From positions 124,001 through 188,000 of IMG/VR virus record IMGVR_UViG_3300046692_000091: a stretch of 64,000 nt of DNA; one strand, 5' to 3'. The notes under the pieces were generated by a model. That model was not told where the DNA came from. It did not search any database and saw nothing but the letters and a program-made list of their open reading frames with translations. Below are positions 33,610 to 47,096 of this stretch, in pieces. Each line of letters begins with the position of its first letter. The first letter of the stretch is position 1. The position numbers and the translations under genes are program-made.

Positions 33610-35034
33610 ATGAAAGAATATTTGTCCATGCAGCAAGAAGTACTGGAACGAGGCGTGCCGAAAGGTGACCGCACTGGTACTGGTACTATTTCTTGCCCTG
33701 GTGTTAGTCGTGTATATGACATCAGCGATAATCGGTTGGCTGCAACGTCTACCAAAAAGATTCACATCAAGACAGGTCAGGTTGAAGAAGACTGGATGTT
33801 GTCAGGTGATACCCGACTGAAGTTCCTGAAAGACAACAACTGCAACATCTGGGACGAATGGGTTCTGAAAGGTACCGGTATCTATCGTAATCGTACGGTC
33901 AAAGAAATGCGTCGAGTTTATACTCGTAACCATTTCGGTTGGTCTAAACCAGTCGTTCTAGATATCGGTTGTGACCCAGAGAACACAGAAGTCTGGAATA
34001 AGGTTGCAGAAACAGAGGACTTCGAAGTCTGGGCATGGGACGTAACTAAAGGCATCGGCATTAAACCACATCATGGCATTCGGGATAAGTCCAAGGATAG
34101 TCTGAATTGGATGAACTGGCAAAACCCAGAAGATCCTATTTGGCTTCAGTTCTACTCTGCTCTGGGTATCTCTGATCTGGAAGTAATGGACGGAGAACTC
34201 GGTAAGGTATACGGGGCAATGTTCCGTAGTATCGAAGACACCCGTATCGATAGTGGTGGGGGTGTTAATGAGAAAGAATGGACAGACCGTGGATTCTCTT
34301 GGGAAGGTATGTTAGGTGATGGCCGATCGGTGTATACGCGTAAGATCGATCAGGTTGCTAAACTACTGTATGATCTGGAGCATAACCCAGATTCTCGTCG
34401 TTTGATTCTGTGTCCATGGAACCCAGCATATGTAGATGAACAAGCATTGCCTCCTTGCCATTCATTCATCCAGTTCTGGACGCGTGAGATGACTTCCGAG
34501 CAACGTTACCATGTCTATTGTAAGCAGTATGACCGTGAGCAAAAAGAGTTGCTTGACGACATTGCTAAACGTAGTCGTGCCGACATTTATACTGCGCATG
34601 CTCCATATCCGTTGTCATGCTTTGCTGAAGTCGACGACCGTGGTACTTTCTTCGATCATTATAAGCTGCATGCTTATCTAGATGAGCTTGATGTTCCACG
34701 TCGTGCTTTGACATGCATTGTTTATATGCGGTCTAACGATGTGTTCTTGGGTGCACCGTATAACCTCACGTTCTATTCTTCACTAACGCACAAGCTGGCT
34801 CACCAGTTTAACATGTACGGTGAGAAACTGGTTCACTTCGTAGGTGATGCACATATCTACCAGAACCATTTGGATCAAGTTGCCGAACAACAAGCTCGTA
34901 CACCTGACCGTGATATGCCTCGACTGAAGATCAATGTTCCGAAAGGTACTTCGATTCTCGACATGACGTTCCAAGATCTGGAAGTGATCGGTTATAACCC
35001 ACAGCCTGCTATTGAAGCACCTGTAGCTGTTTAA
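33610..35034 (+). CDS. thyA: Thymidylate synthase with two large insertions
   Basis: DRTGTGT, IWDEW, ELGKVYG, SRRLI...WNP, LPPCH, RSNDVFLGAPYN, GDAHIY.NH. Confidence 0.95.
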   Translation: MKEYLSMQQEVLERGVPKGDRTGTGTISCPGVSRVYDISDNRLAATSTKKIHIKTGQVEEDWMLSGDTRLKFLKDNNCNIWDEWVLKGTGIYRNRTVKEMRRVYTRNHFGWSKPVVLDIGCDPENTEVWNKVAETEDFEVWAWDVTKGIGIKPHHGIRDKSKDSLNWMNWQNPEDPIWLQFYSALGISDLEVMDGELGKVYGAMFRSIEDTRIDSGGGVNEKEWTDRGFSWEGMLGDGRSVYTRKIDQVAKLLYDLEHNPDSRRLILCPWNPAYVDEQALPPCHSFIQFWTREMTSEQRYHVYCKQYDREQKELLDDIAKRSRADIYTAHAPYPLSCFAEVDDRGTFFDHYKLHAYLDELDVPRRALTCIVYMRSNDVFLGAPYNLTFYSSLTHKLAHQFNMYGEKLVHFVGDAHIYQNHLDQVAEQQARTPDRDMPRLKINVPKGTSILDMTFQDLEVIGYNPQPAIEAPVAV

Positions 35035-40940: not shown

Positions 40941-40960
40941 GGCTACCCTTCGGGGTAGCC
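40941..40960 (+). terminator. Intrinsic terminator
   Basis: ggctaccc-ttcg-gggtagcc plus T tract. Confidence 0.85.
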
Positions 40961-40997: not shown

Positions 40998-41005
40998 TAT
41001 ATTAC
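40998..41005 (+). promoter_or_regulatory. Early promoter TATATTAC
   Basis: Exact motif with aaactttttaaagg upstream. Confidence 0.8.
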
Positions 41006-41036: not shown

Positions 41037-41285
41037 GTGATGTCTCTTACCGCTGTTCTGTTTTCTACTATGATCGGTTTCAATGAAGGCAACGCTCGCC
41101 CTGCGGTACCCAGTCAAGAGAAGATCGAATTCCGTGGTCCGAATGCGATGTCAGCATGTCGCTCATTCGAACCAACGCTGCATACCAAACCACCCACGCA
41201 GTATGGTAACCGCAAAGTGTCAGTTGATACTTACGGGAACGGGATGGTACAGCGTGAAACTTTCTGCGTGCAAACGGAGCAATGA
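41037..41285 (+). CDS. Putative secreted small protein
   Basis: Hydrophobic N-terminus, two Cys. Confidence 0.65.
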   Translation: MMSLTAVLFSTMIGFNEGNARPAVPSQEKIEFRGPNAMSACRSFEPTLHTKPPTQYGNRKVSVDTYGNGMVQRETFCVQTEQ

Positions 41286-41656
41286 TGTCAAAACTTAAGG
41301 AAGAGATATATAAAGGAGAACTACGTAATTTGGAGTTCTCCTATATCGCAGTAACCCTGCAAGCACTGTGGGAAAAAGGTTATGAACCATTCTTGATGTC
41401 AATGCTGGATGTTGATATCGTATCTGACCATACCTTTCGTATTACCAAAGTAGGTGCGAAGTGGTATATCAATTGTTCAGGCCTGTTTTCTTGGGATGTT
41501 AACTTTACCGTGGAGAATGGTAAAGTAGGTGGGATTTACATTAGTAACACCAACTGCAAAAGAAAACAACTGTTGTTCCAGTTGCAAGATCTGGTTCTAC
41601 ATATCTTCACTACGTATCACCAGAACGATGTCCAAATCGACTTCACTGTAAATTAA
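41282..41656 (+). CDS. Hypothetical protein
   Basis: 124 aa, coupled. Confidence 0.75.
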   Translation: MMSKLKEEIYKGELRNLEFSYIAVTLQALWEKGYEPFLMSMLDVDIVSDHTFRITKVGAKWYINCSGLFSWDVNFTVENGKVGGIYISNTNCKRKQLLFQLQDLVLHIFTTYHQNDVQIDFTVN

Positions 41657-41659
41657 GTG

Positions 41660-41688
41660 TTGACACGATAAGAGCCATCACCTATAAT
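41660..41688 (+). promoter_or_regulatory. Consensus sigma70 promoter with overlapping inverted repeat
   Basis: TTGACA (41660-65), 17-nt spacer, TATAAT (41683-88); 9-bp IR gagccatca/tgatggctc at 41672-41696. Confidence 0.7.
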
Positions 41689-41720
41689 GATGGCTCACCC
41701 ACAGTAAGAAAGGATGCAAC

Positions 41721-41927
41721 ATGAAATACGAAGACCTGCTGCTTAACTCCGACCAGACACGGGTTCTGTATCTGGTGGATGTACTCAGAGCAGCAGTGGC
41801 TGAAGGGCGTGAAACTCACAAGCCACAAGGGATTGCCATTACGGAAACACTCGCAGTATTCAGCCTTAATGACGTAGAGCGCAAGGCGTTGCACAGAGAG
41901 GCGATTGAACGCCTCCATACCACTTAA
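41721..41927 (+). CDS. Hypothetical protein of stand-alone sigma70 cassette
   Basis: SD aagga; 68 aa; own promoter and terminator. Confidence 0.75.
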   Translation: MKYEDLLLNSDQTRVLYLVDVLRAAVAEGRETHKPQGIAITETLAVFSLNDVERKALHREAIERLHTT

Positions 41928-41935
41928 CCATAACC

Positions 41936-41953
41936 GAGCCCCGAAAGGGGCTC
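41936..41953 (+). terminator. Hairpin terminator with GAAA loop
   Basis: gagcccc-gaaa-ggggctc. Confidence 0.7.
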
Positions 41954-47088: not shown

Positions 47089-47096
47089 TATATTAC
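47089..47096 (+). promoter_or_regulatory. Early promoter TATATTAC
   Basis: Exact motif; context shared with 26935. Confidence 0.8.

What the first reader, a model, noticed from the sequence alone, without database searches (positions are those of the whole stretch)
41660..41953. Stand-alone gene under a perfect host sigma70 promoter with an operator-like palindrome
Seen: TTGACA-N17-TATAAT at full consensus, the only such promoter I found. A perfect 9-bp inverted repeat (gagccatca-cctataa-tgatggctc) brackets the -10, and gtgt-tg-acac surrounds the -35. One 68-aa helical ORF follows, then a terminator with a GAAA loop, unlike the TTCG loops typical here. Known: phiKZ-like phages use their own RNAPs and shield their DNA from host proteins. 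Inference: an acquired, possibly autoregulated cassette, or a sensor gene expressed only when phage DNA meets host RNAP.
Basis: partly seen in the sequence, partly recalled or inferred. Interest (0 to 1): 0.75.

Follow-up and report, generated by a model that had tools for sequence, protein, structure and literature searches.

The report
Conserved host-type promoter in jumbo phage
A phiKZ-like giant phage, of a kind thought to transcribe its genome only with its own RNA polymerases, has kept one perfect host (sigma70) promoter in front of one small gene of unknown function through long evolution, which implies that host RNA polymerase reads this gene under some condition.

Summary
TTGACA-N17-TATAAT lies at 41660-41688. 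A perfect 9-bp inverted repeat (41672-41680 / 41688-41696) brackets the -10. A 68-aa ORF (41721-41927) and a GAAA-loop hairpin (41936-41953) follow.

The window comes from a 315-kb phiKZ-like phage of the Psa21/D6/RVTF4 clade. It encodes multisubunit RNAPs and no sigma70-family factor.

The decisive evidence is conservation:
- All 16 related loci carrying the 68-aa homologue hold a sigma70-type promoter scoring at least 10/12 upstream of it. It is the best-scoring site of the locus in 14.
- Across 12 lineages, neutral positions are saturated (spacer 0.36, 4-fold sites 0.37). The -35 is 0.92 identical, and A-11 and T-7 are invariant.
- No other gene among 246 ortholog trios has such a promoter.
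- The genome as a whole avoids sigma70-like sites.

The cassette sits inside a phage early operon and is clade-wide, so it is not a recent acquisition.

The repeat is conserved as base-pairing, not as sequence. The protein is a near-neutral helical bundle with no HTH, which disfavours autoregulation.

Whether the gene is a 'sensor' of DNA exposure is untested. No RNA data exist for this phage.

The parts
40941..40960 (+). Phage-type terminator hairpin (TTCG loop) that ends the preceding transcription unit
   Evidence: TTCG is the loop of 34 of the 68 perfect GC-rich tetraloop hairpins in the genome.
40998..41005 (+). TATATTAC, the core of the phage's own early-type (virion RNAP) promoter motif; it marks the start of the operon that contains the cassette
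   Evidence: The motif cTATATTAC occurs 32 times in the genome. About 28 copies are intergenic, on the + strand, with a shared AT-rich upstream context. It fits the published description of phiKZ-type early promoters: an AT-rich motif of about 10 nt centred near -10 (PMC7598289). The assignment is by analogy, not by a mapped TSS.
41037..41285 (+). 82-aa early-operon ORF (phrog_31103, function unknown)
   Evidence: Its homologue directly precedes the promoter in most relatives.
41282..41656 (+). 124-aa ORF with 38% GC, a lineage-specific insertion just 5' of the promoter
   Evidence: Contigs of relatives in runs X3 and X4 skip about 400 nt here. GC is 0.384 against 0.458 for the window. No family match was found.
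41660..41665 (+). -35 hexamer TTGACA
   Evidence: Pairwise identity across 12 lineages is 0.92 (TTGAC 0.97), against 0.36-0.37 at neutral sites.
41672..41696 (.). Perfect 9-bp inverted repeat GAGCCATCA-N7-TGATGGCTC with the -10 in its loop (promoter positions -23..+2)
   Evidence: Across 12 lineages 84.9% of cells are paired, against 27-47% with slid partners, and 4 pairs show changes on both sides. The repeat is unique in the genome. Folding energy shows no strand preference.
41683..41688 (+). -10 hexamer TATAAT
   Evidence: A-11 and T-7 are invariant in 12 lineages; overall identity is 0.77.
41694..41697 (+). Predicted start site for host RNAP, 6-9 nt after the -10 (inferred, not mapped)
   Evidence: Inferred from standard sigma70 promoter geometry. 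No RNA data were available.
41710..41714 (+). Shine-Dalgarno AAGGA, 6 nt before the ATG
   Evidence: It is conserved in the alignment of relatives.
41721..41927 (+). 68-aa ORF: a conserved orphan protein modelled as a four-helix bundle
   Evidence: Homologues occur only in Psa21/D6/RVTF4-like jumbo phages: 8 hits, 6 representatives among 1.84 billion proteins, and tblastn hits. Mean protein identity is 0.57 against 0.37 at 4-fold sites. The AlphaFold2 model has pLDDT 94. No Pfam, NCBIfam, PDB or fold match was found.
41936..41953 (+). GC-rich 7-bp hairpin with a GAAA loop and a weak U-tract; either a leaky terminator or a 3' stabiliser
   Evidence: A hairpin at this position is kept in 13 lineages (-13 to -24 kcal/mol), with 2-5 U in the tails that could be scored. 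It is the only GAAA-loop hairpin of its class in the genome.

Best explanation
This is a genuine host-type (RpoD/sigma70) promoter, kept by purifying selection. It gives one conserved 68-aa orphan gene its own monocistronic unit (promoter, 26-nt leader with Shine-Dalgarno, ORF, GNRA hairpin). That unit is nested inside an operon that the phage's own virion RNAP most likely transcribes from the early motif at 40998.

The gene therefore has two routes of expression. One is read-through by phage RNAP. The other is initiation by host E-sigma70 near 41695 whenever host holoenzyme can reach the DNA.

Shown here:
- the sequence elements;
- their selective conservation against a saturated neutral background;
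- their uniqueness in the genome;
- the absence of a phage sigma70-family gene.

Inferred:
- that host RNAP actually initiates here during some stage or outcome of infection;
- that the selective benefit comes from making the 68-aa protein at that time.

The inverted repeat is selected for complementarity, not for sequence. Its arms occupy the only unconstrained positions of a very compact promoter (the spacer and the discriminator). I read it as a nucleic-acid structure that tunes the unit, either as an RNA hairpin in read-through transcripts or as a DNA dyad affecting promoter opening. I do not read it as an operator for the 68-aa protein. Its exact role is unresolved.
For: 1. Sequence. The promoter is an exact consensus, expected 0.01 times per window.
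2. Presence in relatives. All 16 related loci carrying a 66-69-aa homologue hold a sigma70-type site scoring at least 10/12. It lies 28-33 nt before the ATG (68-71 nt in D6-type phages) and is the top-scoring site of the 2-6 kb locus in 14 of them.
3. Selection. Over 12 lineages the -35 is 0.92 identical, TTGAC 0.97, the -10 0.77, and A-11 and T-7 1.00. The spacer is 17 nt (16 in one lineage). The spacer sequence (0.36) and the gene's 4-fold synonymous sites (0.37) are saturated. This is the information profile expected of sigma70 recognition (established knowledge; PMC7598289).
4. Uniqueness. Among 246 ortholog trios of three complete genomes, the best three-way promoter score is 9. The target scores 12, 12 and 10.
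5. Genome-wide avoidance. Sites scoring 9/12 or more number 302, against 501 +/- 21 in dinucleotide shuffles and 399 +/- 17 in synonymous-codon shuffles. This suggests host holoenzyme is a selective force on this DNA.
6. No phage sigma. No Sigma70_r2 or r4 domain is encoded. The phage's own early motif is different and lies at 40998.
7. The dyad. 84.9% of cells are paired against 27-47% in controls, with changes on both sides in 4 pairs.
8. Precedent. The phiKZ-related phages RSL2 and RSF1 are rifampicin-sensitive, and reviewers state that host-RNAP transcription of some genes cannot be excluded (PMC5468394; PMC7598289).
Against: No transcript data were available: no RNA run holding this sequence was listed, so no TSS is mapped.

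phiKZ itself develops independently of host RNAP (PMC7598289). By the prevailing model (my own knowledge of the field, not checked here) the DNA of these phages is shielded first in an early-infection vesicle and then in the phage nucleus. It is therefore unclear when host RNAP could reach the promoter.

phiKZ and PhiPA3 have no comparable site, and 201phi2-1 has only a chance match inside a coding region. The feature is therefore clade-specific.

The most distant homologue (82 aa, L020/L021) lacks the sigma70 promoter. In L021 it is preceded by the early-type motif TATATTAC instead.

The function of the protein is unknown.
Confidence: 0.6

Rival explanations
1. Sentinel or fail-safe gene. The promoter is silent in a normal infection because the DNA is enclosed. 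It fires only when phage DNA is exposed to the cytoplasm, for example after a failed or breached early vesicle or nucleus, or in a stalled infection. The 68-aa protein then rescues the infection or acts on the host. This is a special case of the best explanation, not an alternative to it.
For: The promoter is conserved in a phage family regarded as independent of host RNAP (PMC7598289). It is the only such promoter in the genome. Sigma70-like sites are avoided elsewhere, as expected if accidental host transcription is costly.
Against: There is no direct evidence. The gene also lies in an early operon and is probably transcribed by phage RNAP in every infection, which weakens an 'only when exposed' logic. 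The protein gives no functional clue.
Confidence: 0.15
2. Autoregulated cassette. The 68-aa protein binds as a dimer to the inverted repeat across the -10 and represses its own promoter, in the manner of Aca or Cro.
For: The dyad spans -23..+2 and is centred on A-11, a classic operator position. It is unique in the genome, as expected for a private operator. Symmetric covariation of the two arms is also what a co-evolving dimer would produce.
Against: The product shows no HTH or RHH. It is a generic helical bundle (best Foldseek E about 1; best VIA Z 6.9, within noise for helical proteins). Net charge is -3 to +1, and the invariant surface residues are acidic.

In L010 the protein is 93% identical, yet the left arm differs at 3 of 9 positions while the right arm is unchanged. 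D6-type phages keep the promoter and a 75-77% identical protein but carry a different dyad downstream of the -10.

Confidence: 0.08
3. Not a working host promoter. The conserved hexamers serve something else, such as a site for a phage factor or phage RNAP, or part of an RNA element in read-through transcripts. The gene would then be expressed only from the phage early promoter at 40998.
For: The early-type motif at 40998 has no strong terminator before the gene. A hairpin is conserved in the intercistronic RNA. The distant homologue in L021 uses the early-type motif followed by a hairpin.
Against: The conservation pattern is exactly that of sigma70 recognition: TTGAC, a 17-nt spacer of free sequence, and invariant A-11 and T-7 with variable middle positions. 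No other copy of the motif exists in the genome, so a dedicated phage factor is unlikely. Published phiKZ-type early, middle and late motifs are different. No phage sigma is encoded.
Confidence: 0.14
4. Replication-related promoter. Host-RNAP transcription from this unique strong promoter primes or activates a phage origin through an R-loop, as at T4 oriF/oriG.
For: Only that it is a single, unique, strong, conserved promoter.
Against: There is no GC-skew inflection near genome position 165.6 kb; the skew follows gene orientation. The promoter is tightly coupled (28-33 nt) to a conserved, well-folded ORF with a Shine-Dalgarno sequence. No AT-rich unwinding element lies downstream.
Confidence: 0.03

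Closest known systems
Phage morons: autonomous promoter-gene-terminator units (described in PMC10914365, citing Juhala et al. 2000)
   Same: One small gene is flanked by its own host-type promoter and a hairpin, embedded in a longer phage operon. Its expression signals differ from those of its neighbours.
   Different: Classical morons sit in temperate phages, are expressed from the prophage, and are patchily distributed with deviant composition. This unit is in a virulent phiKZ-like phage. It is syntenic in the whole clade. Its GC is only slightly raised, 0.507 against 0.458.
Host-RNAP early promoters of phages that also encode their own RNAP (T7 A1-A3; N4 late genes). Textbook knowledge; T7's early rifampicin sensitivity is noted in PMC7598289
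   Same: A consensus-like sigma70 promoter sits in a phage that has its own transcription machinery.
   Different: In T7 the host promoters drive the whole early class and are required. Here a single gene has one, inside an operon that already has a phage-RNAP promoter. The family is regarded as independent of host RNAP.
Rifampicin-sensitive phiKZ-related Ralstonia phages RSL2 and RSF1 (PMC5468394)
   Same: phiKZ-related phages that encode both RNAP sets yet depend on host RNAP for something. The present promoter offers a concrete candidate for that kind of dependence.
   Different: They belong to a different host and clade. No host-type promoter or target gene was identified there, and no homologue of the 68-aa protein was found outside the Psa21/D6/RVTF4 group.
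Anti-CRISPR/Aca operons: a strong sigma70 promoter with inverted repeats bound by an HTH autorepressor (from my own knowledge; not checked in the library)
   Same: A strong host promoter overlapped by an inverted repeat, driving a very small phage gene that would be made at once on DNA entry.
   Different: No HTH partner gene is present and the product is not an HTH. The repeat sequence is not conserved along with the protein.
Cruciform-regulated promoter with an inverted repeat at the -10 (engineered E. coli promoter of Horwitz and Loeb, 1988; from my own knowledge)
   Same: An inverted repeat brackets the -10, so that hairpin or cruciform extrusion could couple promoter activity to DNA supercoiling.
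   Different: That example was an engineered promoter. Nothing here shows extrusion, and the arms are only 9 bp.

Membership tests
Bacterial sigma70 (RpoD) -35/-10 promoter | -35 hexamer close to TTGACA | tested here: met
   6/6 in the window. TTGAC identity is 0.97 over 12 lineages.
Bacterial sigma70 (RpoD) -35/-10 promoter | -10 hexamer close to TATAAT, with A-11 and T-7 | tested here: met
   6/6 in the window. A-11 and T-7 are invariant in 12 lineages and the middle positions vary.
Bacterial sigma70 (RpoD) -35/-10 promoter | Spacer of 17 +/- 1 nt with free sequence | tested here: met
   The spacer is 17 nt in 11 lineages and 16 nt in one. Spacer identity is 0.36.
Bacterial sigma70 (RpoD) -35/-10 promoter | Transcript 5' end 6-9 nt after the -10 that depends on host holoenzyme (rifampicin-sensitive) | not testable with these tools
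   No RNA run was listed.
phiKZ-type early (virion RNAP) promoter | The phage's conserved AT-rich motif (here cTATATTAC) about 10 nt upstream of the TSS | tested here: not met
   The motif is absent from 41640-41720. The nearest copy is at 40998.
Moron | Own promoter and own terminator around a single gene | tested here: inconclusive
   The promoter criterion is met. The 3' hairpin is conserved in 13 lineages, but the U-tract is weak or variable, and the downstream genes have no promoter of their own, so termination must be leaky.
Moron | Patchy presence among related phages and deviant composition, indicating independent acquisition | tested here: not met
   The unit is present and syntenic in all clade members examined. 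GC is 0.507 against 0.458. It is absent from phiKZ and PhiPA3, so acquisition at the base of the clade remains possible.
Autorepressor with operator (Cro/Aca-like) | Inverted repeat overlapping the core promoter | tested here: met
   The repeat spans -23..+2.
Autorepressor with operator (Cro/Aca-like) | The product has a DNA-binding fold (HTH, RHH) | tested here: not met
   The pLDDT-94 model is a four-helix bundle with no significant match. pI is about 5.3-8.2 and no family was hit.
Autorepressor with operator (Cro/Aca-like) | Operator sequence conserved together with the protein | tested here: not met
   The arms drift between loci with 93%-identical proteins, and the dyad is relocated in D6-type phages.
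Intrinsic (factor-independent) terminator | GC-rich stem-loop directly followed by a U-tract | tested here: inconclusive
   The stem has 7 bp, 6 of them GC. The tail ATCTGTTTCT has 5 T in 8 by the scan's rule, with no uninterrupted run. It lacks the ..TTATGC tail that I saw on many of the TTCG terminators (sequence contexts, tails; not counted).
Single-stranded-DNA promoter (Frpo type) | The hairpin itself rebuilds double-stranded -35 and -10 boxes | tested here: not met
   The repeat excludes the -35 and puts the -10 in the loop.

The most novel reading that the evidence does not exclude
Chimalliviruses of the Psa21/D6/RVTF4 clade keep exactly one gene wired to host RNA polymerase. It acts as a fail-safe: the 68-aa protein is made from the sigma70 promoter only when the phage genome is naked in the cytoplasm, for example after a breached or failed early vesicle or nucleus, or in a stalled infection. 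The protein then rescues the infection or disables the host. This would mean that host RNAP access to chimallivirus DNA is a recurrent, selectable event, and the promoter would be a natural reporter of it.
Probability: 0.15. Interest if true: 0.85.

Novelty: new variant of a known kind. Interest (0 to 1): 0.62.

Why it matters
phiKZ-like, nucleus-forming phages are the standard example of transcription that does not need the host. Their DNA is thought to be hidden from host proteins throughout infection.

A consensus sigma70 promoter preserved while neighbouring neutral sites have saturated is hard to explain unless host holoenzyme reaches this DNA often enough to be selected for. The same genomes also deplete accidental sigma70-like sites.

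This turns an open question into a simple experiment at one defined locus in culturable phages (Psa21, D6). The question is whether host RNAP ever transcribes chimallivirus DNA, and if so when and why. It may also bear on why some phiKZ-related phages are rifampicin-sensitive.

The locus also nominates a 68-aa orphan protein as a host-interaction factor. The promoter could serve as a reporter of genome exposure.

Tried and rejected
- RNA evidence: two run searches listed only DNA metagenomes. Laying contigs confirmed the assembly and revealed the 124-aa insertion, but gave no transcripts.
- Protein function: Pfam, PHROGs (only a weak hit to an unknown-function family), NCBIfam, a PDB profile search, Foldseek against PDB, AFDB and BFVD, VIA-align wide, ESM Atlas by shape and ESM Atlas by features were all uninformative.
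- The 835-aa hit P0011 matches through a repeated EATRREAIEKLE-like helix. I treat it as spurious.
- RNA-versus-DNA nature of the dyad: G·U cells outnumber A·C cells 14 to 5. By my own tally that is only about 8 against 3 independent events. Folding energies show no strand preference. The point is unresolved.
- A long-range stem between the -35 region and the start codon appears in the single-sequence fold but is not conserved. Rejected.
- Origin of replication: no skew signal. Rejected.
- A phage-encoded sigma70-like factor: none found.
- A wider class of such promoters: none was found among 246 ortholog trios. phiKZ and PhiPA3 have none, and 201phi2-1 has only a coding-region match.
- The second exact consensus in the genome is inside a coding region. 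I treat it as chance.
- Supplementary TSS tables of the phiKZ ONT-cappable-seq paper were not held.

Full report
**1. What is there**

The window is bases 124001-188000 of a 314,814-bp virus record with 46% GC. Its NAD-dependent ligase is 75% identical to that of Pseudomonas phage Psa21, 70% to D6, 57% to RVTF4 and 39% to PhiPA3. The genome encodes fragments of multisubunit RNAP beta and beta' subunits and no sigma70-family domain. It is therefore a phiKZ-like jumbo phage of the Psa21/D6/RVTF4 clade, recovered from a rhizosphere metagenome.

- TTGACA (41660-41665), a 17-nt spacer and TATAAT (41683-41688).
- A perfect 9-bp inverted repeat at 41672-41680 / 41688-41696 with the -10 in its loop.
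- An AAGGA Shine-Dalgarno sequence and a 68-aa ORF (41721-41927).
- A GAAA-loop hairpin at 41936-41953.

An exact consensus promoter is expected 0.01 times per window. The GAAA loop is unique among 68 perfect GC-rich tetraloop hairpins in the genome, 34 of which have TTCG loops.

**2. Context**

The phage's own early-type promoter motif, cTATATTAC with an AT-rich upstream part, occurs 32 times. About 28 copies are intergenic on the + strand. This matches published descriptions of phiKZ-type early promoters (PMC7598289).

One copy lies at 40998, after a TTCG terminator at 40941-40960. The next lies at 47089. The cassette therefore sits inside a presumptive virion-RNAP early operon: 82-aa ORF, 124-aa ORF, the cassette, then 99-, 226-, 137- and 159-aa ORFs.

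The 22 nt between the 3' hairpin and the next gene hold no promoter. Downstream genes must therefore be reached by read-through, and the 3' hairpin cannot be a tight terminator.

The 124-aa ORF (38% GC) is an insertion absent from relatives. It sits immediately 5' of the promoter.

**3. The decisive evidence is comparative**

The 68-aa protein has homologues only in this clade:
- D6 at 77%, Psa21 at 56% and RVTF4 at 36% identity.
- Eight metagenomic clusters.
- Six representatives among 1.84 billion proteins.

I recovered 16 loci that carry a 66-69-aa homologue. All 16 hold a sigma70-type promoter scoring at least 10/12 upstream of the gene. It lies 28-33 nt before the ATG, or 68-71 nt in D6-type phages. 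It is the best-scoring site of the 2-6 kb locus in 14 of the 16.

Mean pairwise identity over 12 non-redundant lineages:

| Positions | Identity |
|---|---|
| -35 hexamer | 0.92 |
| TTGAC | 0.97 |
| -10 hexamer | 0.77 |
| A-11 and T-7 | 1.00 |
| Spacer | 0.36 |
| 4-fold synonymous sites of the adjacent gene | 0.37 |

The neutral background is saturated, yet exactly the bases that sigma70 reads have been held. The spacer length is kept while its sequence is free. The upstream gene differs between lineages, so no coding constraint explains this.

**4. Uniqueness and genomic background**

I fetched two complete relatives and compared 246 ortholog trios. The best promoter score held in all three genomes was 9, at a site with a poor -35. 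The target scores 12, 12 and 10.

Sigma70-like sites are depleted genome-wide:
- At 9/12 or better: 302 observed, against 501 +/- 21 in dinucleotide shuffles and 399 +/- 17 in synonymous-codon shuffles that keep protein sequence and codon usage.
- At 10/12 or better: 34 observed, against 74 +/- 11 and 52.5 +/- 6 respectively.

The genome thus avoids accidental host promoters but keeps this one. phiKZ and PhiPA3 have no TTGAC-N18-TANAAT site. The single one in 201phi2-1 is antisense inside the ligase gene.

**5. The inverted repeat**

In an alignment of 12 lineages, 84.9% of cells pair, against 27-47% when partners are slid. Four pairs show changes on both sides. RNAalifold recovers only this helix. 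The arm sequences themselves drift (spacer identity 0.36), so selection acts on complementarity.

I could not decide the acting strand or molecule. G·U cells exceed A·C cells 14 to 5, but by my own tally that is only about 8 against 3 independent events. Folding energies of the two strands are equivalent.

D6-type phages keep the promoter and a 75-77% identical protein, but carry a different, longer hairpin downstream of the -10. L019 has almost no dyad. In L021, the distant 82-aa homologue is preceded by an early-type motif plus a hairpin.

The repeat is unique in the genome. The intergenic region is only about 64 nt. The spacer and the discriminator are the only free positions, which may be why the stem straddles the -10.

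**6. The protein**

AlphaFold2 gives a confident four-helix bundle (pLDDT 94). There is no significant structural or sequence match. Net charge is -3 to +1, and several invariant residues are glutamates.

Together with the drifting and relocating dyad, this argues against the product being the repressor of its own promoter.

**7. Interpretation**

The best-supported reading is a functional host-RNAP promoter that gives one small gene a second, host-driven route of expression within a phage-RNAP early operon.

The elements, their selective conservation and their uniqueness are shown. Actual initiation by host RNAP, and the time at which it happens, are inferred.

Its 'only when exposed' logic is weakened because the gene is probably also transcribed by read-through in every infection. 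'Acquired' can hold only at the base of the clade.

For precedent, the phiKZ-related Ralstonia phages RSL2 and RSF1 are rifampicin-sensitive despite encoding both RNAP sets (PMC5468394). A review states that host transcription of some genes cannot be excluded in such phages (PMC7598289). I found no paper describing a conserved sigma70 promoter in these phages. The library is incomplete, so this is not proof of novelty.

**8. Verdict**

The feature is real and non-random, and more interesting than a single consensus match would suggest. It is a new variant of a known kind: a moron-like, host-promoter unit in a phage family held to be independent of host RNAP. Function is unresolved for lack of RNA or experimental data.

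Noticed in passing
G000:C1:219655-219683 (L002:970-998), outside the window: A second intergenic sigma70-like site scoring 11/12 (TTGACA-17-CATAAT). It lies directly downstream of an early-type cTATATTAC motif and 42 nt before a 193-aa ORF. The distant D6-type homologue has TTGACG-17-TAAGAT upstream. The close relative G001 has a degraded -35 (TTGTAT-17-TATAAT). This may be a weaker second case of the same phenomenon.
   Followed up: partly
L019:2249-2277: In a more distant relative, the gene after the 66-aa homologue also has its own TTGACG-17-TATAAT site (11/12). In that lineage two consecutive small genes carry host-type promoters.
   Followed up: no
window 41282-41656: A 124-aa ORF with 38% GC that is absent from relatives (contigs skip about 400 nt). 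It is inserted precisely between the stop codon of the 82-aa gene and the -35, and it preserves the TAAGTGTTGACAC junction. Psa21 has a 133-aa gene at the same spot; I did not test whether the two are homologous.
   Followed up: partly
whole genome G000; in the window e.g. 716, 19179, 22337, 26935, 40998, 47089, 54288, 59287: About 28 copies of an early-type promoter motif (AT-rich upstream part plus cTATATTAC), nearly all on the + strand. Many are preceded by a TTCG-loop terminator with a ..CTTTATGC.. tail, which contains the TATG known as the phiKZ late-promoter core.
   Followed up: partly
whole genome G000: Sigma70-like promoter sites are depleted relative to both dinucleotide shuffles and synonymous-codon shuffles (z about -6 to -9 at 9/12 or better). 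The very best sites (11/12 or better) are not depleted.
   Followed up: yes
window 33610-35031: The thymidylate synthase ORF is 474 aa, but it matches a PHROG profile of about 335 positions in two stretches. This suggests an insertion of roughly 150-200 aa (an intein, a homing element or an extra domain) within ThyA.
   Followed up: no
window 41682-41918, minus strand: A 78-aa antisense ORF overlaps the 68-aa gene almost completely, and my crude gene caller preferred it. Conservation, the Shine-Dalgarno sequence and the confident fold all support the + strand ORF. Automatic annotation may miscall this locus.
   Followed up: partly
P0011 (835 aa, metagenomic): An 835-aa protein carries six tandem repeats of about 33 aa (..PEATRREAIEKLE.LDITH.GVLV.YA.AL..), which match the C-terminal helix-turn-helix-like part of the 68-aa profile (E 5e-8). 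This is probably convergent helical repeats rather than homology.
   Followed up: no
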